Shown piece after piece: positions 7,214-20,207 of a stretch of 64,000 nt of DNA (positions within the stretch are counted from its first letter, which is position 1; each line of letters begins with the position of its first letter). The notes under the pieces are model-generated. The model saw only the letters and a program-made list of their open reading frames with translations. It was not told the DNA's origin and searched no databases. Made by a program: the position numbers and the translations under genes. The DNA is from Obrimoposthia wandeli (lineage: Eukaryota), in assembly GCA_977020255.1 (NCBI GenBank), contig CDROCS010001209.1, positions 186,001-250,000 of the forward strand, read 5' to 3'.

Positions 7214-7383
7214 TTGCTTGAATCCAGAGTTACTCACTAAAAACGCCAAGATAATTAAGTAACACTAATAAAGTGCCAGAGAGCCCTGAAAGCATGAGTA
7301 ACCAGTAAAATACAAAACCTAATACTTGATCAAACTTAGTTGTATTTTCGAATAAAACCGTTGCATTAGCCTCCATAAATGAA

Positions 7384-8400
7384 CCTGATTACCACTTAAA
7401 TTCCGCCAATTGACTACACTTAAAATGAAATAAAAAGTGAGGCGATCGGCTATTTCAAAAATAAAATTCAAAAAAGTATTTTTAATACATGCTTTTTTAT
7501 TTTCACAACTAGGTACTGAAGAGCAATATCGAAAACGACTGTTTGATATGCGATGGCCTACTGAACCTATGTGAACATTGGGGCTGTGATAAGTATTGTG
7601 GTGGAAATCAAGAAAACTTTATCAATGTAACCAGTGCCATCATCAAGGATCAGTTACGTCTGGCACCTTATTTTCCGCTTCAAAATTGCCATTAAACATA
7701 TGGTTTTAGCTATTTACCTCATAACTCAAGAGAAAAATGGTATTTCTGCATTAGAGCTGTCTCGCCAGCTTGGCATTTCCTATAACGCGGCATGGCGTAT
7801 GAAGCATAAATTGATCAAAACAATGAAAAGAGCGAGATGATAGAAAAACACCATTGAATGGTTACACATTCAACTGGACGATGTTTATTGGGGAGGAGTC
7901 CACCGTGGCACCCGAGGGCGTGGAGCCAAAGGAAAACGTCCTTTCGTTGCCGCAGTATCAATGAACGAAGATGGTCACCCAATTAACATGCGATTTAGTG
8001 TTGTAACAGGTTTTAAAACCAAAGAATTAACGCGTTGGGCGAAAGCGAATCTTGTACCTAAATCTCTCGTTATTTCTGATGGTTTGGCTTGCTTTAAGGG
8101 GGTTAAAAAAGCGGATGTTTTTCACCTAGCTATCGTCACTGGCGGCGGTGCTGATTGGCATTGCGCCTTGTACTTTTCAATGAGTCAACACAATGATTAG
8201 TAATGTGAAAAATTCAATGCCCAGTACTTACCATGCAATAAACAAAAACATTTACCTCGTTATCTCGGAGAATTCTGTTTTAAGTTCAATAGGCGCTTCA
8301 ATCTTGAATAAATGCTCGAACAGCTCATTTACTCAAGTATCCAGACAGCACCGATGCCTGAGCGGTTACTTAAACTGGCTGAGGCTCGGTGGTAATCAGG
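7384..8400 (+). mobile_element. IS1595-family insertion sequence, degenerate (1017 bp)
   Basis: Terminal inverted repeats starting CCTGATTACCAC; 8-bp target duplication TAAATGAA at 7376-7383 and 8401-8408; transposase remnants inside. Confidence 0.9.
7425..8395 (+). pseudogene. IS1595-family DDE transposase with multiple frameshifts and stops
   Basis: Fragments ...KNGISALELSRQLGISYNAAWRMKHKL, DDVYWGG...RGRGAKGKRPFVAAV, SDGLACF and YLGEFCFKFNRRF lie in different frames. Confidence 0.85.
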
Positions 8401-8628
8401 TAAATGAAAGAGGGCTCTTTTCTAATACACGGCTCCATGAACTGGGCAACGCTAATGCTTGTGCAACGTTAATAATATCCCAGCCACTCGCAAATTCTAC
8501 ACCAAGCGCATCTTTTGTTTTTGGGTTCTGTCTTAATTTTCGAACAGTGATTTGCCCAAAAGCAACATATAAGATACATGCAAAAAACATAAAAAGAGCG
8601 ACGATACCTAATAGTTGAGAAAAAACAC

Positions 8629-8943
8629 TTACAGGTCACCTATTGATTTCATTACAGAATCATACCAACTACCACTATTGTTTTTTACAGCATTATTCAT
8701 TCCTATTGAGGCAGCCGCCGCCGTCCCTGCAACAGCAACCCCTCCCACAATTAAACCCACCCAACCAATGGGTGTTGCCACCATTAAAAACATTAGAGCG
8801 GATCCTCCAGCATTAACAACTGCTGTTCCAGTCGCTGCACTTAAAGCAAAACTACTCGATTCAATAAATATCTCTCGCTCCCAGTTACCACCGGCTTTAT
8901 AGCTATTATGAATATTGCCCACACGGCTACCAAAGTCGATAAC
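8629..8943 (-). pseudogene. Orphan C-terminal cassette (tip 4) of the 10571-11548 toxin-like gene
   Basis: VIDFGSRVGNIHNSYKAGGNWERE is identical to the full gene, followed by a variant hydrophobic hairpin; no N-terminal region. Confidence 0.85.
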
Positions 8944-8976
8944 TAGGGTGTATTGATGTTTTAAGGCTTGTAATCG

Positions 8977-9354
8977 CTATTTAGCAAATACACTTAAAGC
9001 ATTTAAAATAACTAATACAAAACCAAAAAAACCAGTTGAAAGCCAACACCAAAAAAAGATGCAACCTAAAATCCGATCAAATTTAGTTGTATGTTTGAAT
9101 ATTAAATTCGAATTGGCATATAAAAAAGAAAGAGGGCTACTTTCAAGTTTTTCACTCCAGCCTTTAGGGAGAGATAATGCTTTGGCCACATTTAAAATAT
9201 CCCAACCACTTACAAATTCATTTCCAAGTGCATTTTTTGTTTTTGGATTTTTTCGTAATTTTCGAACAGTGACTTGCCCAAAAGCAACATATAATATTCC
9301 AGTCACCATTGAGGCAGCGATCATTATTCCAACTAATATTGTTATAATATCCAT
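8977..9354 (-). CDS. Putative immunity protein copy 3 (2-TM membrane protein, intact)
   Basis: 125 aa; shares GQxTVRKLRxNPKTKxxLGxE..SGWDI.NVA with the other copies; TAATG overlap with tip 3. Confidence 0.75.
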   Translation of the reverse strand: MDIITILVGIMIAASMVTGILYVAFGQVTVRKLRKNPKTKNALGNEFVSGWDILNVAKALSLPKGWSEKLESSPLSFLYANSNLIFKHTTKFDRILGCIFFWCWLSTGFFGFVLVILNALSVFAK

Positions 9355-9620
9355 TAATTATATACACTTTTAATTAATGAATCATATGTGTTGCCAGCAT
9401 TACCTTTAATTAGGTTATTCATTCCCAGTGATGCTGATGCTGCAACTCCTGCAATAGCTAAACCACCGACAACAAGTCCCATCCAACCTGCTGGCGTTGC
9501 AAAAACAAGAAGAGCTAAGCCAGCATCAACAACTAAAGTACCAGTAATTGCACTATCAGCAAAACTACTCGATTCAATAAACATCTCTTGCTCCCAGTTT
9601 CCATCGGCTTTATAGCTATT
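9354..9620 (-). pseudogene. Orphan C-terminal cassette (tip 3)
   Basis: NSYKADGNWEQEMFIESSSF...ATPAGWMGLVVGG homologous to the full gene; begins abruptly after copy 2. Confidence 0.85.
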
Positions 9621-9650
9621 TGTTTGCCTTAACAGATTGATAATAAATAT

Positions 9651-10025
9651 CTAATTAGTAAATATTCCTAGCAAATCTAGCAGCATCAAACTAAAAAACA
9701 TTAGACCTGAAACCATCCAACATAAAAAAAACACACCACCTAAAAAGCGATCTAACTTATTTGTATGCTTTAATATGAGGGTTGAATTAGCATACATAAA
9801 AGATAAAGGGCTGTTTTCAAACCTTTTACTCCATGCTCGCGGGAGGGCTATCGCATTAGCTACATTTAATATATCCCAACTACTAACTAACTAACTCACT
9901 ACCCAAAGCCTCTTTTGTTTTAGGATTTTTCCTAAGTTTCCGCACAGTGATTTGCCCAAAAAGTACAAATAGGATGATTGCAAAAAAACCAATAATAGCA
10001 GCTATAGCTAAGAGTAATGAAACAT
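9651..10025 (-). pseudogene. Putative immunity gene copy 2, frameshifted
   Basis: Reconstructs as ...LFVLFGQITVRKLRKNPKTKEALGSELVSSWDILNVA...GIFTN*; one T is missing after the ATG and there is an extra TTAG unit at ~9883-9897. Confidence 0.8.
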
Positions 10026-10027
10026 GA

Positions 10028-10196
10028 TTACTTCAACCAATTCATGATATCGTCATACCACTCACCACTATTGCTCTTAAGCTTATTATTCGTCCAGATA
10101 GATGTACCTGCTGCCGTCCCTGCAACAGCAACCCCTCCCACAATTAAACCCATCCAGCCAAAAGGTGTCGCCACGATTAGAAAGCTTAAAGCAGTT
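10028..10196 (-). pseudogene. Orphan C-terminal cassette (tip 2), shortest
   Basis: RTALSFLIVATPFGWMGLIVGGVAVAGTAAGTSIW...WYDDIMNWLK abuts the stop codon of copy 1. Confidence 0.8.
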
Positions 10197-10574
10197 CTAC
10201 TCACTAAAAACGCCAAGATAATCAAGTAACACTAATAAAGCGCCAGAGAGCCCTGAAAGCATGAGTAACCAATAAAATACAAAACCTAATACTTGATCAA
10301 ATTTCGTTGTGTTTTCAAATAAAACCGTTGCATTAGCATTCATAAATGAAAGAGGGCTCTTTTCTAATACACGGCTCCATGACTTGGGAAACGCTAACGC
10401 TTGTGCAACGTTAATAATATCCCAGCCACTCGCATACTCTACGCCAAGTAGATCTTTTGTTTTTGGGTTCTTTCTTAATTTTCGTACAGTGATTTGTCCA
10501 AATGCAACGAACAATATACCCGTCACCATTGAACTTAAAATTATAATCATAACAATTATTGTAGTCGGCTTCAT
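10197..10574 (-). CDS. Putative cognate immunity protein copy 1 (2-TM membrane protein)
   Basis: 125 aa with N- and C-terminal hydrophobic helices; ATGA overlap with the toxin-like gene. Confidence 0.75.
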   Translation of the reverse strand: MKPTTIIVMIIILSSMVTGILFVAFGQITVRKLRKNPKTKDLLGVEYASGWDIINVAQALAFPKSWSRVLEKSPLSFMNANATVLFENTTKFDQVLGFVFYWLLMLSGLSGALLVLLDYLGVFSE

Positions 10575-11548
10575 AAGCGGCTTAACTCTTTAGTAATAAT
10601 ATCGTAAGCATCACCACTATTATTTTTAATATAGCCATTTATTCCTATAGAAGTTGCAGCAGCCACTCCTGCAACAGCAACCCCTCCTACAATTAAGCCC
10701 ATCCAGCCGATGGGTGTCGCCACCATTAAAAACATTAAAGCAGCCCCGCCGGCCTTGACTGTTGCAGTTCCAGCCATTGCACTAGCAGCGAAACTACTCG
10801 ATTCAATAAACATCTCACGCTCCCAGTTACCACCGGCTTTATAGCTATTATGAATATTGCCCACACGGCTACCAAAGTCGATAACAGCAAGACCATTTCC
10901 TAAGAATTTTGCGTGCTTACTAAATTTAACAATATTGTCGGCTTGAACGGGGGTCATTATGTCTAGTTTTGCAATGCTTCTGCTACTTCTGGCGATACTT
11001 GCGCCTCTATCAAAATTAGCTAGCGGCGTACCACGACTAGATTTAACTTGACTGGATACAACCTTAACTTCGTGTTTAAAGCGATTTTGCATTTTATCAA
11101 ACGCGATTTTGGCTTTTTGTTTAGCGGCGGATTTTAAGGGAGATTTGGTTGTTGTGGCCTGTCGGTATTCCATTAAGGCTGATTGATAGTTTTTAACTGA
11201 GCCAACAAAACCATCCATTCTATTTGCGTAAATACTGGTTGATGCACCCATTAACCCTACATTGTATTCTTGCAGTTGAGCGTTAAGAGATGAAAGCGCA
11301 ATCAGATTGTCACCACCAAAAGACAACGCTAAATTGGTGAGGTTTTGTGAAATAGCTGAATTAGATAATTTTGCCAGTGTAGCCGACCCAATAGCGGGAT
11401 TCCCCCCTTTTAATAAATAAGGTCTCTTCGCGAGAATCATATCAGGATTAGTACAAGTAAGAGATGAAGCTAGCCCTATGTCAATACCGCACTCATTTTT
11501 AAACGCGCTGGCACTAAAAGTGCGATTACATAAAATCATCCTGCTCAT
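10571..11548 (-). CDS. Putative pore-forming toxin/effector with a colicin-like C-terminal hydrophobic hairpin
   Basis: The C-terminal GNW..E..S...A...(Gly/Ala-rich hairpin)...ATPIGWMGLIVGG pattern resembles colicin A/E1 channel domains by eye; no signal peptide; RBS AAGGA upstream. Confidence 0.6.
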   Translation of the reverse strand: MSRMILCNRTFSASAFKNECGIDIGLASSLTCTNPDMILAKRPYLLKGGNPAIGSATLAKLSNSAISQNLTNLALSFGGDNLIALSSLNAQLQEYNVGLMGASTSIYANRMDGFVGSVKNYQSALMEYRQATTTKSPLKSAAKQKAKIAFDKMQNRFKHEVKVVSSQVKSSRGTPLANFDRGASIARSSRSIAKLDIMTPVQADNIVKFSKHAKFLGNGLAVIDFGSRVGNIHNSYKAGGNWEREMFIESSSFAASAMAGTATVKAGGAALMFLMVATPIGWMGLIVGGVAVAGVAAATSIGINGYIKNNSGDAYDIITKELSRL

Positions 11549-11779
11549 TTGCTTTTTAAATTCCTTTTAAAATTTGAGTTATGATTTAGCGGCTTATCTT
11601 ACAATTGAAAGATAAATAGATAAAAATATCAGTTTCAATCTTTGCGATTGAAACCTCTTTTATTCCATTATGGGAAGCGCGTACGAGGGGAAGCATATTG
11701 TTTGATTGTATGGGCAGGAAAGGCTATTAATTTCGTATTTTGGTATGACCCGTTTTTTCGGACTAACCCGTTTTAAAAC

Positions 11780-11813
11780 AAAAAAAACGCCCCTGCATTA
11801 CTGCAAAGGCGTT
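11780..11813 (-). terminator. Rho-independent terminator of pta
   Basis: AACGCC...GGCGTT stem followed by a T tract on the minus strand. Confidence 0.65.
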
Positions 11814-11850
11814 CGATATTGTTTGTTTGTTTAGCTAAGCTAAGCAGTAA

Positions 11851-14007
11851 TTACTTCGCAGCGTCTTCAGTTTGCTGAGCCTGAATCGCAGTTAGTGCTA
11901 CTGTGTATACGATATCGTCTACTAGTGCGCCACGAGAAAGGTCGTTTACCGGCTTACGCATGCCCTGAAGCATAGGACCGATAGAAACTAGGTCAGCTGA
12001 ACGCTGTACCGCTTTGTACGTCGTGTTACCAGTATTTAGGTCTGGGAATACGAATACTGTTGCTTTACCCGCTACAGGAGAATTAGGCGCTTTAGAAGCG
12101 GCTACATTTTCCATAATTGCAGCATCGTACTGTAGAGGACCATCGATGATTAGATCAGGACGTTTCTCTTGAGCAATGCGTGTCGCTTCACGTACTTTAT
12201 CAACATCAGCACCCTTACCAGATGTACCAGTAGAGTATGAAATCATAGCAACGCGAGGTTCGATACCGAATGCTTTTGCAGAATCAGCAGATTGAATCGC
12301 GATTTCAGCAAGTTGCTCAGCATTTGGATCTGGGTTGATTGCACAGTCACCGTATACCAGTACTTGATCAGGCAGAAGCATGAAGAAGATAGAAGATACG
12401 ATAGAAGCATCAGGTGCTGTTTTGATGATTTGGAACGGAGGAACGATCGTGTTTGCTGTGGTGTGAACCGCACCAGAAACAAGACCATCAACTTCACCCG
12501 CTTCAAGCATCATTGTGCCTAGGAAAACAGAATCTTGAAGTTTTTCACGTGCAACAACGTCGGTCATGCCCTTCGCGCCGCGAAGTTCAACAAGACGTTT
12601 AACGTAGTTTTCACGTACAGTTTCAGAATCGATGATTGTAACACCAGCACCTAGTGTAACGCCTTGCTGTTCAGCAACACGTTTGATTTCTTCTGGGTTA
12701 CCAAGAAGAACACACTCAGCAATGCCGCGTTCAGCACAGATTGCAGCAGCTTTAACAGTACGAGGTTCGTCACCTTCAGGAAGAACAACACGCTTAGCGG
12801 CTTTACGCGCTAGCTCTGTTAATTCATAACGGAATGCTGGTGGGCTTAGACGACGCTCTTTAGCAGAGCCTTCAGTTAATGATTCAATCCACTGACCATC
12901 GATGTGGCTAGCCATGTATTCATTAACGAATTCTACACGTTCTTTATCGTCTGCTGGTACTTCAAGGCTGAAGCTCTGAAGATTCAGAGATGTCTGCCAA
13001 GTGTTACCTAGAGCAGTCATTACAGGTAGACCAGTTGCGAATGCACGCTCACAAAGATCCATCACTGGCTTAGGTAGCTCATAGCCGCCAGTAAGAAGAA
13101 GTGCACCGATTTCAACGCCGTTCATTGCTGCAAGACATGCCGCAACGATAACGTCAGGACGGTCTGCAGAAGTGACTAGTAGTGAACCAGGACGGAAGTG
13201 CTCAACCATGTGCGGAATAGAACGCGCACAGAAAGTGATGCTCTTGATACGACGAGTCGCAATCTCACCTTCGTTGATGATTTCAGCATTAAGGTGCGCT
13301 GCAATATCTGTCGAACGTGTTGCAATTAGCTCAGAGCTCCATGGTGCGCAACCAAGTACACGAATAGGGCTAGAGTTGTATACTTGCATTACTTCAACGT
13401 TTAGCGGAATAGTTGTACCGTCTACATCGTCAAAGATTTCAGATAGGTCAGGGCGAGTACGGCCTTCAGCATCTACAGGTGCGTTTAGTTTGTTAACAAT
13501 AACGCCTGAGATTTGCTTGTTTTTAATGCCGCCGAAGTTAGAGCATGCTACTTGGATACGCTCTTTTAGTTGTGCAGGGTTATCAGTACCGTGCGCAATA
13601 ACGAATACGATTTCCGCACCCAGCGTTTTAGCAATTTCATAGTTAATCTGGTTCGCAAATGGGTGTTTGCGAGTAGGTACAAGACCTTCGATTAATGCTA
13701 CTTCAGATTGAGAGGTTGACGCTTTGAAACGCGCTACTATGTCTTCTAGCAGTACATCACTTTGGTCGTTACGAAGAAGCTCTTCGGCACGTGCCATTGT
13801 AAATGGTTCTGCAATTTCCATATCGCTGTTAGCACGGATGATCGTTGTAGTCAGATCCGGCTGCTCACCACCATGACGTGGCTGTGCGATAGGCTTAAAG
13901 AAAGAAACACGAACGCCTTTGCGTTCCATTGCACGTAAAACACCAAGGCTTACGCTTGTTAGACCAACACCAGCGCCAACTGGGATGAGCATAATAGTAC
14001 GGGACAC
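11851..14007 (-). CDS. pta: Phosphate acetyltransferase (long form with DRTGG domain)
   Basis: GVGLTSVS N-terminus; [24 protein letters not shown] and PDLNTGN motifs. Confidence 0.97.
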
Positions 14008-14171
14008 TATGAATTCCTCAAACTATTGAATAATACAGCGCTGTTCGATAACGATTCTAAAGGCAGGTCGATCTGCAAATCAGAACAATTATGGAGCAAC
14101 GCCACAACAGACAATTGTATTACACATGAAAAAACGGCCAGCCTAGGCCAGCCGTTATAATAATCGTTAAA

Positions 14172-15368
14172 TTAGATAGCAGCTAGAAGCGCTGTATCTT
14201 CTGCGATAACTAGTTCTTCGTTAGTAGAAACTACCATTGCAGGTACACGGCTGTTTGCAGTCGTGATAACACCTTCGCCACCGAAGCGTGCTTTTAGGTT
14301 CGCGTCGCCGTCTACTTCGATACCGAAGATAGATAGACGGTTAAGTACCATTTCACGGATAGGTGCAGAGTTTTCACCGATACCACCAGTGAATACGATA
14401 GCGTCTAGACGGCCTTCCATTGTCGCTGCGTAGCTAGCTACGTACTTAGCTAGACGGTGACAGAATACGTCCATTGCACGTGTTGCTTCTTCTTTCTTGC
14501 CGTAGTTTTCTTCAACGAAACGACAGTCAGAAGTCACACCAGTAAGACCAAGTAGGCCAGACTCTTTAGTGAACATTGTGTTAATTTCAGCAACGCTCAT
14601 ACCTAGACGGTCGTGTAGGTGGAACATAACTGCAGGGTCAAGGTCACCACAACGTGTACCCATTACTAGGCCTTCTAGAGGAGTAAGACCCATAGAGATA
14701 TCTACAGATTTACCGCCTTTAATTGCACATACAGATGCGCCGTTACCTAGGTGACAGTTGATGATGTTTAGTTCATCAAGTGGCTTGTCTAGTAGTTTTG
14801 CTGTTTCACGAGCGATGAAACGGTGAGATGTACCGTGTGCGCCGTAGCGACGGATGCCGTTTTCTTTGTATAGACGGTAAGGAATCGCGTATAGGAACGC
14901 TTCCTGAGGCATTGTTTGGTGGAATGCTGTATCGAATACAGCAACGTTTTTAAGAGCTGGGAAGTTGTGCTTAGCAGCCTCAATACCAATAACGTGTGCT
15001 GGGTTATGAAGAGGCGCGAAATCAGACGCATCAATAACACCTTGAAGAACTACATCGTCAATAAGTGCTGATGCAGAGAACTGCTCGCCACCGTGAACGA
15101 TACGGTGACCGATAGCGCCTAGTGCGTCTTTAAGTTCTGGCTTAGAAGCAAGGATAGTGTCAACCATGAATGCTAGTGCTTCTTCGTGCGCAGCGCCTTC
15201 ACCTAGTTGAGCTTCGTGCTTACCATCAAGTTTCCATTTGATGCGTGATTCTGGAAGACCTAGACATTCTGCTAGACCTGTTAGGTGCTCTTCACCTGAT
15301 ACAGGATCAATGATTGCGAACTTAAGAGATGAACTACCGCAGTTTAGAACTAAAACCAGCTTAGACAT
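14172..15368 (-). CDS. ackA: Acetate kinase
   Basis: [32 protein letters not shown] and FTGGIGEN motifs. Confidence 0.97.
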
Positions 15369-15707
15369 GAGAGTGACTACCTATAATCTGTCTGTAGAAT
15401 TGATATTCGTGAGAATAAAAAAAAGTACCCATAGCGTAGACGACTTTTGATACAGTCAGTCTAAATCGGGTTAAATTTGTGCACTATCCGTAGGGCGAGA
15501 ATTGAGTAACCCACAATCCAGGGTCATCCTTGATGGCTGCTTTAGGTTGCCTAAATGGTAATTACAGGCAACAATTATCTTAAAGCGTGCTTAGGATAGC
15601 CGATTGTTACCCAATATAACAAAAAGATTTTAGAAAAATTTAATTTGAATCAAGTTTATTACCACTTTATTTTAATCTTTATGTTTTTTTTTGATGAATG
15701 GTGCTTT

Positions 15708-16157
15708 ATGACTCAACGTACGGTTTGGCAACACTTCCAAAATGGTCAGCAGTACATGGCAACATGGCCTATGCGCAAAGAGCTAGCAGCCATATTTCCA
15801 GAACAGCGCTACATTAAAGCGACAAAATTCGCGACTCGTGTTATGCCAGCCGTTGCAGTAATGAGTGTATTAAGCCAAATGGCATTCAATAACTATGGCG
15901 CGCTACCACAAGCGATGACGGTGGCACTATTTGCATTGACCATGCCTTTGCAAGGTTTGTGGTGGTTGGGTAAGCGCAGTCGAACGACGTTGCCACCTTC
16001 ATTAGCTATTTGGTATCGTGAAATTTATGAAAAGATCACCAGTGAAGGGCACGCAATGCAGCCGTTGAAAAAACAGCCTCGGTATCTTGAATTGGCAGAA
16101 GTATTGAATCGCGCGTTTAAGCAACTGGATAAAACATCGTTAGAAAGGTGGTTTTAA
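15708..16157 (+). CDS. yfbV: YfbV (DUF412) membrane protein
   Basis: GQQYMATWP and [11 protein letters not shown] motifs; divergent from ackA as in enterobacteria and vibrios. Confidence 0.9.
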
Positions 16158-16221
16158 CGACAAATATGGTGTGATTTCGTGGAAGTCGTAAAATGATACC
16201 TACTATCAGAAAGAAGAAAGT

Positions 16222-16247
16222 AAAAAAGCCCTGAGTAAGGGCTTTTT
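16222..16247. terminator. Bidirectional terminator
   Basis: AAAAAAGCCCT...AGGGCTTTTT. Confidence 0.7.
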
Positions 16248-16355
16248 AGTTCAGGTTAATCACCTTCTGTTATTCGCCAGACGATAGTGAATGTATCAAG
16301 CTATCGTAAAGCCCAGCCAGTGTTGTTACCTTCAATATCATTAACAGCGAAATGT

Positions 16356-16667
16356 TTATTCGTCGTCAAATAAACCGTCTAGTGGCTTTTTAGTACGAAT
16401 GCCATCTTTAACTAAAATCTCAAGATAGAATGAAGTCAGTTCTAATTTCTCAGCTTCATCGATGCACTTGTTGATTTCTTTAAGGTGGATTACTTTTGCT
16501 TCTTGTTCGGTGTGACCAAACTTACAATCAAAATCCCAAAAATCGATACCAGAAGGAAGCTGCTTATTGCGCTCTCTTTTGATGTACTTTTTCACTTCAC
16601 TTTTAACTGATTCAACGATTCTTGGCACAGCTTTTTTTGGGTGAGTTAAAGCAAATGTTTTTTTCAT
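16356..16667 (-). CDS. Small conserved hypothetical protein (DUF6172-like)
   Basis: MKKTF.L...KYIKRERNK.LP.G.DFWDFDCKFG pattern. Confidence 0.6.
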   Translation of the reverse strand: MKKTFALTHPKKAVPRIVESVKSEVKKYIKRERNKQLPSGIDFWDFDCKFGHTEQEAKVIHLKEINKCIDEAEKLELTSFYLEILVKDGIRTKKPLDGLFDDE

Positions 16668-16990
16668 TGTTTTCCTAAATCTAAATAAGGGCTCAGAAAA
16701 GATAGAGCGCTAGGCATATTTTACTTCAATTCTACAACAGTAGCGACGGTGAAGTGGTATTTCAATTAATCCTAAGATTTTTATATGCATAGAGATAACA
16801 GGTAACTCTTTCATTTTTCATCGTTAATAAATATTTGTTGATTGATTAGAATACGGTAGAAGAAGAGGGGAGTAATGAGCGATTTGAGCGAGGCATGGTA
16901 TCAAACGTGACAAATTAATGCGTTGAGATAACCCCGTAATAATCTATATCTAATAATAAAGTTATACAGGGTCATGTTCCTTGAATTTAA

Positions 16991-17785
16991 TTAACTCAGT
17001 AAAAGGCTGTCATCCGCTAATTCTTCGCCCCGCACTTTACTGAACATTTCAAGCAGCTGTTTTACGCCCATTTTGTCTCGTTCTTGACCTTTAACGTCTA
17101 AAACGATTTCACCTTGGTGAAGCATGACAGTGCGGTCACCGTGCGCGAGGGCATCTTTCATTGAGTGCGTTACCATCATTACTGTGAGATCGAACTCTTT
17201 GACCACTTTTGTTGTAAGGGCTAGCACAAAAGCGGCCATTCTTGGGTCTAATGCCGCGGTGTGTTCATCGAGTAATAATAATTTACTGTCGGCTAATGTC
17301 GCCATGACTAAACTCACGGCTTGGCGTTGCCCACCTGAAAGTAAGCCAATACTGTCACCTAAACGATCTTCTAAACCTAAGCCAAGAATACTGATGCGTT
17401 CTTGAAAAAGTTTTCGGCGATTTGATGACAGCGCCATTTTCCAACTGCGTTGGCTGCCACGTTTATAGGCTAATGCCATATTCTCTTCAATCGTCAAAGA
17501 AGCACACGTGCCGGCTAATGGGTCTTGAAAAACACGCGCAGCGTATTGTGCGCGTTGATGAACAGATTTATCCGTTACATCAATATTATCAATTAATACC
17601 TGCCCATCGCTCATCGGGGTTTCGCCACTGACTGCGCCCAGTAATGTTGATTTTCCCGCACCATTTGAGCCAATCACAGTAACAAATTGTTTTTCTGGCA
17701 CCATCAAGTTAATACCACGTAGTGCTTGGTTTTCTAAAATAGTGCCTTCGTTGAAGGTAACGCGAATATCATTTAATTCAATCAT
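16991..17785 (-). CDS. ABC transporter ATP-binding subunit
   Basis: GSNGAGKST, LSGGQRQ and LLLDEH motifs. Confidence 0.9.
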   Translation of the reverse strand: MIELNDIRVTFNEGTILENQALRGINLMVPEKQFVTVIGSNGAGKSTLLGAVSGETPMSDGQVLIDNIDVTDKSVHQRAQYAARVFQDPLAGTCASLTIEENMALAYKRGSQRSWKMALSSNRRKLFQERISILGLGLEDRLGDSIGLLSGGQRQAVSLVMATLADSKLLLLDEHTAALDPRMAAFVLALTTKVVKEFDLTVMMVTHSMKDALAHGDRTVMLHQGEIVLDVKGQERDKMGVKQLLEMFSKVRGEELADDSLLLS

Positions 17786-17800
17786 CTTTAGCTTTACCTC

Positions 17801-18727
17801 CTAGGCGAGTTTTTTAGTGGTTGCTACGCGTTTCTTTTTGCGATTTAAGCTGTTTTTCATTTTGGGTGCAATTAAGGCAACGGCAACAAGAACAGCGGTG
17901 ATCAAATTAAGATCGGAGGCTTTAAGCCCGAACATACCTGAACTTAATGCAAACGCGACCGCGAGGCGATACAACACTGAGCCGACAATAACAGCGACCA
18001 CTGCAACCCATATTTTTCTACCAGAAATAAGGGTTTGTCCTAAGATAACCGCCGCAAGACCGACCACAATGGTTCCGACCCCCGAGGTAACATCAGCAAA
18101 GCTGTTTGTTTGGGCGAATAGAGCGCCAGAAAAACCGACAAAACCATTTGAAAGCGCAAGGCCAAGGTAGGTATATAACGCAGTGTTGCCGCCTTGCGCA
18201 CTTACCATGCGGCTATTCACGCCCGTTGCACGTAAACCTAAGCCAAAATCACTGGCTAACAAACGAATGATGAACCAAGCACTAAAGACCACAAGCAGAG
18301 CAACAACCAATAAGCGAATTAAATTAGAGTCAAAGCCGTAATCCATCGCAAAGTTTTCGAACGGGGTCAAAATAGTCTCTTCTCCTAAAAGAGCAAGATT
18401 AGGGCGACCCATAATGCGGATATTGATAGAGAAAGCGGCAATCATGGTCAGAATGCTGGCCAATAAATGCAAAATATTACAGCGAATGGCTAAGAATCCA
18501 GTCACTAAACCACAAGCACCACCTGCAAATATTGCCATTAACGTGGCAATCCATGGATTAATGCCTGCCACAATAGCGGTAGCAGCGACCGCAGCACCCA
18601 TAGGGAAACTGCCATCGACGGTTAAATCGGGAAAATCTAAAACGCGAAAAGTCAGGTATACACCAAGTGCAACCAATCCATACACTAATCCAATTTCTAG
18701 CGTACCGATGAAGGCAAAGAAAGACAT
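17801..18727 (-). CDS. ABC transporter permease (BPD_transp_2 type)
   Basis: Multi-TM; FPDLTVDGSFP and GLGLRATG motifs. Confidence 0.85.
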   Translation of the reverse strand: MSFFAFIGTLEIGLVYGLVALGVYLTFRVLDFPDLTVDGSFPMGAAVAATAIVAGINPWIATLMAIFAGGACGLVTGFLAIRCNILHLLASILTMIAAFSINIRIMGRPNLALLGEETILTPFENFAMDYGFDSNLIRLLVVALLVVFSAWFIIRLLASDFGLGLRATGVNSRMVSAQGGNTALYTYLGLALSNGFVGFSGALFAQTNSFADVTSGVGTIVVGLAAVILGQTLISGRKIWVAVVAVIVGSVLYRLAVAFALSSGMFGLKASDLNLITAVLVAVALIAPKMKNSLNRKKKRVATTKKLA

Positions 18728-18752
18728 CTATAACACTCCTTGTCTTATATGA

Positions 18753-18782
18753 AAGAGGCAAGAGTTATAGCTCTTGCCTCTT
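18753..18782. terminator. Intra-operon hairpin after the binding-protein gene
   Basis: AAGAGGCAAGAG...CTCTTGCCTCTT. Confidence 0.6.
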
Positions 18783-18794
18783 GCCATTTGAAAC

Positions 18795-19763
18795 TTATTT
18801 TGCGATTGAGGTTGCGCGTGCTAATACTGCCGCTGGGAAGGTAATCCCTAACTTCTTGGCCGCTTTTTGGTTTAAGGCAAGATCTGACCCTTTAGCGACA
18901 TGAACCGGTAAATCAGCGACTTTCGTGCCTTTAAGTAGTGCATCAACATAGTCTGCTGTTTGAATACCAACTTGGTAATAGTCAAAGCCCAATGCTGCAA
19001 GTGCACCATTTTCAATATAAGTAGTCGATGCGCCAATAATCGGTTTGTTTGCTTGGTTTGCTGCGTTCACTAGCCCATCAATCGCACTGGCAATAGTGTT
19101 ATCTGTTGGTGCGTAAATAACATCCACTTTTGATGCGATAATTTGCGCTGCTGATTGAACATCTGCACTTTTAAGCGCTGTGCCTTCTACGACTTCAATG
19201 CCTTTTGCTTTTGCGGCTTCACGAAGTAATTCAACTAACACAACAGCATTGGATTCACCAGGATTAAAGACCACACCGATACTTTTTAGGTTTGGAATGA
19301 TTTCTTGCATTAGTTCAACATGTTGAGCAACGGGTGATAAGTCAGAAAGACCGGTTACATTACCGTTGGGTTTTTCCATGTTTTTAACGAGTTTTGCGCC
19401 AACAGGATCAGTAACAGCTGTAAATACAACGGGAATAGAACGAGTAGAAGCGGCAAGGGCTTGTGCGGTTGGTGTTGCAATACCGACTAGGACATCTGGT
19501 TGTTCGCCGACAAATTGTTTGGCTATTTGAACCGCAATGGCGGGGTTACCCTGTGCTGTCTGATAAGTGAATTCAAGGTTTTCACCTTCGACGTATCCTT
19601 TTGCTTTTAAACCATCGAGTAAACCTTGGCGTGTGGCATCAAGAGCGGGGTGTTCAACGATTTGTGATACTGCGACTTTGGCAACATCAGCGAAGGCAGA
19701 TGCGGATGATAGTGCGAATGATGCCGCTATACCAGCCGCGATAAGTAGTTTTTTACCCTTCAT
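18795..19763 (-). CDS. ABC substrate-binding protein (ABC_sub_bind family; homologs bind aromatic amino acids)
   Basis: Signal peptide; QIVEHPALD, TAVTDPV and PTDNT motifs. Confidence 0.85.
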   Translation of the reverse strand: MKGKKLLIAAGIAASFALSSASAFADVAKVAVSQIVEHPALDATRQGLLDGLKAKGYVEGENLEFTYQTAQGNPAIAVQIAKQFVGEQPDVLVGIATPTAQALAASTRSIPVVFTAVTDPVGAKLVKNMEKPNGNVTGLSDLSPVAQHVELMQEIIPNLKSIGVVFNPGESNAVVLVELLREAAKAKGIEVVEGTALKSADVQSAAQIIASKVDVIYAPTDNTIASAIDGLVNAANQANKPIIGASTTYIENGALAALGFDYYQVGIQTADYVDALLKGTKVADLPVHVAKGSDLALNQKAAKKLGITFPAAVLARATSIAK

Positions 19764-20207
19764 TGCAAGCTCCTTGCTTTATTATTTTATCCATTTAGAG
19801 AGCCGTCTCTAGTTCGAACTGTGATCTCATAGGATAATGTTTTAGCGTAAAGCGAAAAGAAAGAACATCTAATTTTTAACAAGTCTGAAACATTACATCT
19901 ATCTAATATGTGGTTTGTTAATGAAATGGCGGGGGATTGATTTGAATTTTGGAGGTCGAGTAGTGTTTAAATGCTGTATTTTGGGTATCAGTCTGGTTAA
20001 TTATGTTTTATTGGAATTTTTGATAATATTGTTCTTAACTGACTTATTTTTCATGCTGAAAAACTCAAAGCCTATTCAGTTTCAAGAAAGGTCAATGCAG
20101 GATACTGAACCAGTAAAAGGGATATTTAGCTGTATCTCTCCTAAGTCCCCCACCAGCTGGCCGCCGATGGGGGACTACTCTTTTCTGGCTTGTTATTAGC
20201 AATTTCT

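What the first reader, a model, noticed from the sequence alone, without database searches (positions are those of the whole stretch)
10571..11548. Colicin-like channel domain fused to an unrecognised N-terminal (delivery?) domain
Seen: the C-terminal ~120 aa (FSKHAKFLGNGLAVIDFGSRVGNIHNSYKAGGNWEREMFIESSSFAASAMAG...ATPIGWMGLIVGGVAVAG...) have amphipathic helices, a G-N-W motif and then a long uncharged hairpin. Established: colicin A/E1/Ia pore domains show the same order, and their immunity proteins are small inner-membrane proteins that recognise the hairpin region, which is exactly the part that varies between tips here. Inference: the ~200-aa N-terminus has no signal peptide and no PAAR, Rhs or MIX motif that I recognise, so it may be a new trafficking domain (T6SS cargo, or bacteriocin-style release).
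Basis: inference. Interest (0 to 1): 0.75.

Follow-up and report, generated by a model that had tools for sequence, protein, structure and literature searches.

The report
Orphan T6SS-linked colicin-like pore toxin
This Photobacterium gene encodes a 325-residue toxin whose tail is a distant relative of the colicin pore-forming domain and whose unrecognised 210-residue front part occurs almost only in bacteria with a type VI secretion system, so it is most likely a new class of injected membrane-puncturing weapon, paired with its own small membrane immunity protein.

Summary
Window 10571-11548 (-) is an intact 325-aa ORF with a GNW motif (residues 240-242), a hydrophobic hairpin (about 266-303) and no signal peptide.

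Pfam's Colicin model does not match. A family profile does find colicin B (E 0.0022), pyocin S5 and colicin A as three of the top four PDB hits. hhalign against ten colicin pore domains gives 94% probability, against 8% or less for reversed and shuffled controls.

Residues 1-212 fold confidently (pLDDT above 90) into a domain with no clear PDB match, and one relative carries this domain with a different tail.

The gene is nearly always an orphan pair with a conserved 125-aa two-TM immunity gene (79 of 81 loci). It still tracks T6SS closely:
- TssC is present in 42 of 50 carrier genomes, against 76 of 393 sampled non-carriers.
- Within one family, TssC is present in 19 of 19 carriers against 34 of 182 others.
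- A T6SS subtype with tandem tssC genes is present in 16 of 19 carriers against 3 of 182 others.
- In one genome the pair sits inside the T6SS core cluster.

No SOS box or lysis gene is present. Best reading: a T6SS cargo pore-former with a new N-terminal domain, a new variant of a known kind. Secretion and pore activity are untested. The scan had noted this stretch before (s1-241104, s1-241163).

The parts
10571..11548 (-). Toxin gene, 325 aa, intact
   Evidence: ORF list. Full-length alignment to 31 and to 124 relatives.
10913..11548 (-). N-terminal module, residues 1-212. It has a small beta-alpha-alpha-beta unit (1-62, with three near-invariant Cys at 7, 20 and 32) followed by long helices. 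Proposed T6SS loading domain.
   Evidence: AF2 with 125 sequences gives pLDDT above 90 over 1-96 and 111-212. No Foldseek match, and best VIA Z is 7.4 against generic helical bundles. P0203 has the same module with a different C-terminus.
10574..10912 (-). C-terminal toxin module, residues 213-325: conserved amphipathic core (213-256), hydrophobic hairpin (about 266-303) and a variable last helix.
   Evidence: Segment conservation and hydropathy. Profile matches to colicin B, pyocin S5 and colicin A.
10694..10945 (-). Stretch (residues 202-285) that aligns with positions 102-175 of the 200-residue colicin pore domain
   Evidence: hhalign probability 94.2%, E 1.2e-7. Controls reach 8% or less.
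10197..10574 (-). Cognate immunity gene, 125 aa, two predicted TM segments (1-30 and 95-124). Its start overlaps the toxin stop.
   Evidence: Present directly downstream in 79 of 81 loci. TM prediction. No Pfam family for any of 29 members.
10028..10231 (-). Orphan toxin tip 1 (matches residues 270-322), followed by an immunity C-terminal fragment at 9651-9797
   Evidence: blastp and alignment.
9354..9650 (-). Orphan toxin tip 2 (matches residues 246-322)
8977..9354 (-). Intact orphan immunity gene (125 aa) paired with tip 2
8629..8976 (-). Orphan toxin tip 3 (matches residues 229-325, 75% identity)
7230..8590 (-). Last orphan immunity gene, split into an N-half (8396-8590) and a C-half (7230-7376) by a decayed IS1595-family element (about 7377-8395)
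   Evidence: The two halves abut when aligned to the intact immunity protein. DDE_Tnp_IS1595 E 2e-8.
11609..11638 (-). Promoter-like site upstream of the toxin. The pta terminator at 11785-11814 separates the cassette from pta.
   Evidence: Consensus scans only. Sequence.

Best explanation
The gene encodes an antibacterial cargo effector of the type VI secretion system.

Proposed mechanism (inferred): the N-terminal 212 residues form a folded module that loads the protein onto the T6SS of the same bacterium. That system is a subtype with two tandem sheath genes, tssC-tssC', found on contig C122 of this assembly. After injection into a neighbour's periplasm, the C-terminal ~115-125 residues act as the toxin. 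This part is a divergent relative of the C-terminal half of the colicin pore-forming domain. It would insert its hydrophobic hairpin into the inner membrane and depolarise the cell.

The 125-aa two-TM protein encoded just downstream would protect the producer and its kin in the membrane. The downstream tip and immunity cassettes are a store of alternative toxin ends and of extra immunities.

Shown here: the homology signal, the module boundary, the toxin-immunity synteny, and the genomic link to T6SS. Inferred: secretion, loading partner, site of action, pore formation and immunity.
For: Colicin link:
- The family profile finds colicin B (E 0.0022), pyocin S5 (0.046) and colicin A (0.087) among the top four of 177,635 PDB sequences, all on the same region.
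- hhalign against ten colicin pore domains gives 94.2% probability. Reversed controls give about 8%, and 30 column shuffles give 0.5% or less.

Module boundary:
- AF2 pLDDT is above 90 for residues 1-212 and low after that.
- P0203 shares residues 1-202 but has another tail.
- Orphan tips start at residues 229, 246 and 270.

Toxin-immunity pair:
- A 125-aa membrane protein follows the toxin in 79 of 81 loci.

T6SS link:
- TssC is present in 42 of 50 carrier genomes, against 76 of 393 non-carriers in a class-wide sample. In that sample 7 of 8 carriers have TssC. Fisher p = 1e-19.
- Within one family of 201 genomes, TssC is in 19 of 19 carriers against 34 of 182 others (p = 6e-13). Tandem tssC-tssC' is in 16 of 19 carriers against 3 of 182 others (p = 5e-18).
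- In L053 the pair lies between tssC' and tagJ inside the core cluster.
- The window's bacterium has such a T6SS: C122 is 96% identical to the T6SS locus of G487, probably P. profundum SS9. It carries hcp, vgrG and an Rhs nuclease effector.
Against: - No experiment of any kind supports secretion or pore activity.
- Pfam Colicin does not match any of 125 members.
- Only about 74 columns align with colicins, and the C-terminal fold is predicted with low confidence.
- 79 of 80 related loci have no T6SS gene within 10 kb.
- 8 of 50 carrier genomes showed no TssC, four of them isolates: Marinobacter caseinilyticus, Pseudomaricurvus hydrocarbonicus and two Microbulbifer.
- No known T6SS marker domain (MIX, PAAR, Rhs) was seen.
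- The co-occurrence statistics are not corrected for shared ancestry, and the tandem-tssC counts were made by hand from the tables.
Confidence: 0.7

Rival explanations
1. It is a true colicin-type bacteriocin. The cell would release it by lysis or leakage, and target cells would import it through an outer-membrane receptor and the Ton or Tol system, with the N-terminal module serving as receptor-binding and translocation domain.
For: The tail is homologous to colicin pore domains. The gene pair is almost always free-standing. 8 of 50 carrier genomes showed no TssC. The conserved extreme N-terminus (M-S-E-I-L-L-C) could in principle act as a TonB-box-like strand, which is my speculation.
Against: There is no LexA box upstream and no lysis gene. 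The immunity gene is co-directional and overlapping, unlike the opposite-strand immunity genes seen next to the colicin E1, K, Ia, B and S4 genes fetched here. The protein is far shorter than those colicins, whose annotated genes encode about 490-630 aa. AF2 puts residues 2-7 inside a folded domain. The tight link to T6SS, 19 of 19 against 34 of 182 within one family, would be unexplained.
Confidence: 0.1
2. It is a membrane-disrupting polymorphic toxin delivered by another contact-dependent or vesicle route, such as an extracellular contractile injection system or outer-membrane vesicles. The T6SS co-occurrence would then reflect shared ecology and mobile islands, not dependence.
For: It is orphan in 79 of 80 loci. 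It has no known T6SS marker. The co-occurrence is not phylogenetically corrected. The family is patchy and clearly mobile: 3 of 67 Photobacterium species, and members in MAGs labelled Desulfobacterium, Desulfocapsaceae and Nitrospina.
Against: The association holds inside a single family and is specific to one T6SS subtype. One copy is embedded between tssC' and tagJ. No other secretion gene recurs near the toxin in 81 loci.
Confidence: 0.12
3. It is a member of the already described Tme family (Tme1/Tme2, membrane-disrupting T6SS effectors), so nothing new beyond a divergent N-terminus.
For: Same size class (Tme1 is 310 aa), a C-terminal toxic domain with a TM helix, a membrane immunity protein downstream, orphan location, and marine gammaproteobacterial hosts (PMC7046647, PMC10435454). 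Some distant relatives carry D-x-x-K-like strings before the D/N-W motif.
Against: None of six family accessions, nor 'Photobacterium profundum', occurs in the supplementary tables of either paper, though the large tables were truncated in storage. The immunity family shows no DUF1240 match in 29 members. The first 55 residues hold three Arg and are not obviously arginine-rich. I had no Tme1 sequence by reference, so no direct comparison was made.
Confidence: 0.2

Closest known systems
Pore-forming colicins and pyocin S5 (colicin B 1rh1, colicin A 1col, E1, Ia, K, S4; Pfam PF01024)
   Same: There is profile-level homology over the amphipathic helices before the hairpin, the G-N/D-W motif, and the first arm and turn of the hydrophobic hairpin. 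The hairpin lies near the C-terminus and is followed by a short helix with an acidic residue. A small integral-membrane immunity protein is encoded next door.
   Different: Only about half of the 200-residue domain aligns, and the Pfam model does not match. There are no colicin translocation or receptor domains, no SOS box and no lysis gene. The immunity gene is co-directional. The gene is chromosomal, not plasmid-borne, and is tied to T6SS.
VasX / TpeX (Ptx2): MIX-I T6SS effectors with a colicin-like C-terminal TM domain
   Same: They are T6SS-linked, carry a C-terminal colicin-like membrane domain held to be the toxic unit, and have a membrane immunity protein downstream (bioRxiv 10.64898/2026.08.24.746647).
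   Different: Those are about 1,085-aa proteins with MIX and PH-like domains, encoded next to vgrG and hcp. This one is 325 aa, orphan, without a MIX motif, and with an unrelated N-terminal fold.
Tme1/Tme2 with the RIX delivery domain (Vibrionaceae)
   Same: They are small (about 310 aa) orphan T6SS cargo effectors. The N-terminal part drives secretion and the C-terminal part disrupts membranes. A TM immunity protein lies downstream (PMC7046647, PMC10435454).
   Different: The delivery module here is about 210 residues and not visibly Arg-rich, whereas RIX is 55 residues. The immunity protein is not DUF1240-like by Pfam. The family is spread over many gammaproteobacterial orders, whereas RIX is limited to Vibrionaceae and Moritellaceae.
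Polymorphic toxin loci with orphan tip and immunity arrays (Rhs, CdiA-CT)
   Same: One full gene is followed by displaced C-terminal tips, each with its own immunity gene. Similar arrays occur in about ten other loci.
   Different: The carrier is a 325-aa protein, not a giant Rhs or CdiA. The tips are only 65-115 aa.

Membership tests
Colicin pore-forming domain (PF01024) | Match to the Pfam model above its gathering score | tested here: not met
   No hit at E<=1 for the window protein or for any of 125 family members.
Colicin pore-forming domain (PF01024) | Sequence homology to solved or annotated colicin pore domains | tested here: met
   Profile against PDB: colicin B E 0.0022, pyocin S5 0.046, colicin A 0.087. 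hhalign 94.2% probability, controls 8% or less. This covers the C-terminal half of the domain only.
Colicin pore-forming domain (PF01024) | Ten-helix globular bundle burying a hydrophobic helical hairpin | tested here: inconclusive
   AF2 pLDDT is 23-56 over residues 215-325. Fold searches are driven by residues 77-189. The hairpin itself is clear from hydropathy.
Colicin pore-forming domain (PF01024) | Voltage-dependent channel formation and depolarisation | not testable with these tools
   Needs periplasmic expression with potential dyes, or planar bilayers.
Colicin operon (bacteriocin system) | SOS-regulated promoter, lysis gene, translocation and receptor domains | tested here: not met
   No CTGT-N8-ACAG site (one mismatch allowed) between pta and the toxin. 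No lysis ORF. The N-terminal fold has no known match.
T6SS cargo effector | Encoded in genomes that have a T6SS | tested here: met
   42 of 50 carriers against 76 of 393 non-carriers. 19 of 19 against 34 of 182 within one family. The window's own bacterium has one on C122.
T6SS cargo effector | Genetic linkage to T6SS core, vgrG, hcp, PAAR or adaptor genes | tested here: inconclusive
   The pair lies inside the core cluster in L053. In the other 79 loci there is none within 10 kb.
T6SS cargo effector | Known marker or delivery domain (MIX, FIX, RIX, PIX, WHIX, PAAR, Rhs) | tested here: not met
   No Pfam or NCBIfam match. No MIX core motif by eye. No large fusions among the best 150 representatives. 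RIX, PIX and WHIX profiles were not available.
T6SS cargo effector | T6SS-dependent secretion and killing, neutralised by the downstream immunity protein | not testable with these tools
   Requires secretion and competition assays.
Tme family / RIX class | Tme domain (DxxK, TM helix, flanking D) and listing among the authors' Tme or RIX proteins | tested here: inconclusive
   The accessions are absent from both papers' stored supplements, but the large tables were truncated. No clean DxxK in the window protein, though conserved D316 follows the hairpin. No Tme1 sequence was available by reference.
Tme family / RIX class | DUF1240-like immunity protein | tested here: not met
   hmmscan of 29 immunity proteins gives no DUF1240 hit at E<=1. 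The authors used HHpred, which is more sensitive.
LysM domain (PF01476) | Beta-alpha-alpha-beta fold with the LysM sequence profile | tested here: inconclusive
   AF2 topology of residues 1-46 fits. The Pfam model gives no hit in 125 members. hhalign against LysM domains gives 27% probability in correct register, controls 0.9% or less. A distant relative (L126) has a LysM hit at E 0.0028, below the cut-off.

The most novel reading that the evidence does not exclude
Residues 1-212 define a new T6SS delivery (marker) domain. It would be specific to the T6SS subtype with tandem tssC-tssC' sheath genes and spread across many marine gammaproteobacterial orders. Its LysM-like first 60 residues might dock on the spike or hub in the way LysM-type tail proteins do in phage and contractile-injection baseplates, or might hold the toxin on prey peptidoglycan. 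If so, the domain could be used to find further unknown effectors, such as P0203 with its different tail.
Probability: 0.35. Interest if true: 0.65.

Novelty: new variant of a known kind. Interest (0 to 1): 0.5.

Why it matters
T6SS effectors that lie far from the secretion genes and carry no known marker are hard to find. Each new delivery domain (MIX, FIX, RIX, PIX, WHIX) has opened up sets of new toxins.

This family has hundreds of members across marine Gammaproteobacteria. Apart from an automatic UniProt 'channel forming colicins' label on a few members, it is annotated only as hypothetical protein. No paper in the searched library mentions it.

It offers three things:
- A compact, roughly 115-125-residue version of the colicin pore module, useful for asking what the minimal pore-forming unit is.
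- A candidate loading domain tied to one T6SS subtype.
- A new membrane immunity family.

P. profundum SS9 is a cultivable strain, so the predictions should be testable there.

Tried and rejected
- Pfam, NCBIfam and PDB searches with the single sequence found nothing usable.
- The first AF2 run with 32 close sequences gave a poor model, pLDDT 47. The run with 125 diverse sequences replaced it.
- Foldseek against PDB gave no match at E<=0.001. The VIA-align wide search gave best Z 7.4 on generic helical bundles, within the noise level stated for helical models.
- The ESM Atlas search on residues 1-212 returned one unnamed cluster at 0.83, which is not informative.
- An apparent ABC-transporter neighbour in 19 loci turned out to be unrelated ABC ATPases at varied distances and orientations, and was rejected.
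- Complex prediction on toxin residues 195-325 plus the immunity protein returned no verdict (score 0.31, mark 0.34). This is neither for nor against binding.
- LysM membership of the N-terminus remains a lead only.
- Tme and RIX membership: accession look-ups in the supplements were blank but the files are truncated. The Tme1 sequence was available only as a PDB text file, and I did not retype it.
- A LexA-box search found nothing upstream.
- Reads tools were not used.
- G000 is a 1.35-Gb multi-organism assembly. Only bacterial contigs C1209 and C122 and short T6SS loci were read, and no host contig was examined.

Full report
**Setting.** The window is a Photobacterium contig (C1209) inside a 1.35-Gb, 6,912-contig assembly that holds several bacteria besides a large host genome. 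The region around the finding is about 91% identical in DNA to one of two loci in genome G487. G487 is probably P. profundum SS9: the closest protein, PBPRA2800, is 87% identical.

On the minus strand the order is:
- pta, with a strong terminator at 11785-11814;
- a promoter-like site;
- the 325-aa gene at 10571-11548;
- an overlapping 125-aa gene at 10197-10574;
- three displaced toxin tips, each followed by a whole or broken copy of the 125-aa gene.

The last copy of the 125-aa gene is split by a decayed IS1595 element. The island lies between pta and a yfcE-like phosphoesterase gene.

**Observation.** The ORF, the quoted sequence, the GNW motif (240-242) and a single TM-like stretch (268-304) with a conserved T-P-x-G-W turn are all there. 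Single-sequence searches of Pfam, NCBIfam and PDB return nothing.

**The family.** 556 proteins in the 90%-clustered database and 411 clusters in the 50% library match. Nearly all are 310-375 aa long and align end to end. They come from many marine gammaproteobacterial genera: Psychromonas, Colwellia, Pseudoalteromonas, Shewanella, Neptunomonas, Marinobacter, Microbulbifer, Endozoicomonas, Moritella, Methylobacter and others. A few come from MAGs labelled Desulfobacterium, Desulfocapsaceae, Nitrospina or Sphingopyxis.

Within Photobacterium only 3 of 67 species genomes carry the family, and one of those copies is frameshifted. The cassette is therefore mobile. No large fusion to VgrG, PAAR or Rhs appears among the best 150 representatives.

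**The tail.** Pfam's Colicin model matches none of 125 members. Profiles are more sensitive. With 32 sequences the only non-coiled-coil PDB hit was colicin B, at E 0.1. With 125 diverse sequences the results were colicin B at E 0.0022, pyocin S5 at 0.046 and colicin A at 0.087. Those are three of the top four hits, and all align query residues about 198-300 to the same part of the pore domain.

I then fetched ten annotated colicin pore domains from plasmids: E1, K, a K-like one, two Ia/Ib-type, S4, B, and colicin-like genes from E. coli, Klebsiella and Proteus. hhalign against this set gives 94.2% probability, E 1.2e-7, with residues 202-285 aligned to positions 102-175 of the 200-residue domain. 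Reversing either alignment gives about 8%, and 30 column shuffles give 0.5% or less.

The aligned part runs from the amphipathic helices before the hairpin, through the G-N/D-W motif, to the hairpin turn. I conclude that the tail is a divergent homologue of the C-terminal half of the colicin pore domain. The fold could not be confirmed, because AF2 confidence is low from residue 215 on.

**The front part.** With the 125-sequence alignment, AF2 gives pLDDT above 90 for residues 1-96 and 111-212. The predicted elements are:
- a beta-alpha-alpha-beta unit (1-62) holding three near-invariant cysteines;
- three long helices (64-165);
- a short helix, a strand (192-197) and a helix (200-212).

Foldseek finds no PDB match, and the wide VIA search gives only generic helical bundles at Z 7.4 or less.

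The module boundary is real. Relative P0203 keeps residues 1-202 and then switches to an unrelated, apparently strand-rich 146-residue tail. Orphan tips here and in about ten other loci start between residues 148 and 273.

The first 46 residues resemble LysM in topology. A weak in-register profile signal exists (27% probability, controls 0.9% or less). A distant 332-aa relative has a sub-threshold Pfam LysM hit. This stays a lead, not a finding.

**Immunity.** A 125-aa protein with TM segments at both ends and a highly conserved, basic middle (FGQxTVRKLRKNP...SGWDILNVAQALAxP) follows the toxin in 79 of 81 loci. It has no Pfam family, neither DUF1240 nor colicin immunity.

Between tips, the variable parts are the first hairpin arm and the last helix. 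The second arm is conserved. Family-wide, the core (213-256) is the most conserved segment and 301-325 is among the least, on a par with residues 1-62.

**Delivery.** No secretion gene recurs near the toxin. Only one of 80 related loci has T6SS genes within 10 kb. In that one, L053 from a Marinobacteraceae isolate, the pair sits between tssC' and tagJ. The surrounding cluster reads tssM ... tssA-tssB-tssC-tssC', then the pair, then tagJ-tssE-tssF-tssG-clpV-hcp-vgrG.

At genome level the link is strong:
- TssC is present in 42 of 50 carrier genomes.
- In an evenly drawn sample of 401 Gammaproteobacteria, TssC is in 83 overall, in 7 of the 8 carriers and in 76 of the 393 others. Fisher p = 1e-19 for 42 of 50 against 76 of 393.
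- Inside a single family (201 genomes), all 19 genomes with the family or its sister subfamily have TssC, against 34 of 182 others (p = 6e-13).
- In the same family, 16 of those 19 have the tandem tssC-tssC' arrangement, against 3 of 182 others (p = 5e-18).

The tandem counts were read by hand from the tables, and none of these tests corrects for shared ancestry.

All three Photobacterium carriers have the tandem type, which 18 of 67 species have. In this assembly the tandem-type T6SS on C122 is 96% identical to the T6SS locus of G487 (probably SS9). It carries hcp, vgrG, two unknown genes (96 and 325 aa), an Rhs-nuclease effector and a YezG-like immunity gene. It is therefore an antibacterial system in the same bacterium.

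Nothing points to bacteriocin-style release. There is no LexA box and no lysis gene, and the immunity gene is co-directional.

**Comparison with known systems.** Colicin-like pore domains on T6SS effectors are known from VasX and TpeX and are widely predicted on MIX effectors (PMC6267618). Small orphan membrane-disrupting effectors with an N-terminal secretion domain are known from Tme1 and RIX. This family works like these.

It differs in its 210-residue N-terminal fold, its immunity family, its host range and its tie to one T6SS subtype. I could not compare it directly with Tme1. The family's accessions are not in the stored, truncated supplementary tables of either paper. No paper in the library mentions PBPRA2800 or the accessions.

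**Verdict.** This is a real, intact and widespread toxin-immunity module. It is most likely (about 0.7) a T6SS cargo pore-former with a new delivery domain: a new variant of a known kind. Interest is moderate, as a useful lead for effector discovery and for minimal pore modules, but not a new principle.

Noticed in passing
G000 as a whole; window = C1209:186001-250000: The 'genome' is a 1.35-Gb assembly of 6,912 contigs. Bacterial T6SS loci (tssC and hcp) lie on at least eight contigs, and seven of these also carry vgrG, from more than one bacterium. C122 is 96% identical to the T6SS locus of G487 (probably P. profundum SS9), while C5637 is only about 70% identical. The window is therefore a symbiont or contaminant contig in a host assembly.
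   Followed up: partly
window 7230-8590: A decayed IS1595-family (ISXO2-like) element with frameshifted transposase pieces is inserted in the last orphan immunity gene. It separates the N-half (8396-8590) from the C-half (7230-7376).
   Followed up: yes
G000:C122:420157-422673; L053:6848-9921; many other genomes: A T6SS subtype carries two adjacent full-length tssC paralogues, about 38% identical to each other in L053. The gene order is tssA-tssB-tssC-tssC'-tagJ-tssE-F-G-clpV-hcp-vgrG. Within one family it is present in 16 of 19 genomes that carry the toxin family and in only 3 of 182 that lack it. The role of the second sheath gene is unknown to me.
   Followed up: partly
L053:10001-11346: In Marinobacteraceae bacterium S3BR75-40.1 the toxin-immunity pair is inserted inside the T6SS core cluster between tssC' and tagJ. 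It is the only such case among 80 loci.
   Followed up: yes
P0203 (348 aa, six metagenomic contigs): This relative has the same N-terminal 202 residues joined to an unrelated 146-residue tail that looks strand-rich by eye and has no Pfam match. It may be a second toxin type on the same delivery module.
   Followed up: partly
L074, L075, L078, L081, L083, L085, L086: The most divergent subgroup (about 40% identity, gammaproteobacterial and Chromatiales MAGs) shares extra conserved genes after the immunity gene. One is an ORF of about 300 aa. In L083 there is a 2,625-aa ORF (12132-20009) with no Pfam match at E<=0.001.
   Followed up: no
L121:5147-6447 (G000:C122, downstream of vgrG): Between vgrG and an Rhs-endonuclease effector lie a 96-aa and a 325-aa ORF with no Pfam match. 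They may be a PAAR-like or chaperone pair for the Rhs protein.
   Followed up: no
L126:1064-3071 (a Vibrionaceae genome, G622): A 332-aa protein with a weak N-terminal LysM hit and a tail distantly matching this family (E 1.9e-5) is flanked by two copies of a different 126-128-aa multi-TM protein. It looks like a sister toxin-immunity system.
   Followed up: partly
L042 / L111 (Photobacterium marinum AK15): The copy in this species is split into two frames (residues 1-81 and 80-322), so it is probably a pseudogene. Its immunity gene is still present downstream.
   Followed up: no
P0190 (459 aa, metagenomic): This ORF reads from a toxin straight into an immunity-like sequence (…VTVRKLRRNPATRHALG…). 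It is probably a frameshift or assembly fusion of the two genes.
   Followed up: no
window 11363-11548 (residues 1-62): Three near-invariant cysteines (C7, C20, C32) sit in the small N-terminal unit of a protein predicted to be cytoplasmic in the producer. They may form a disulfide after delivery or a metal site.
   Followed up: no
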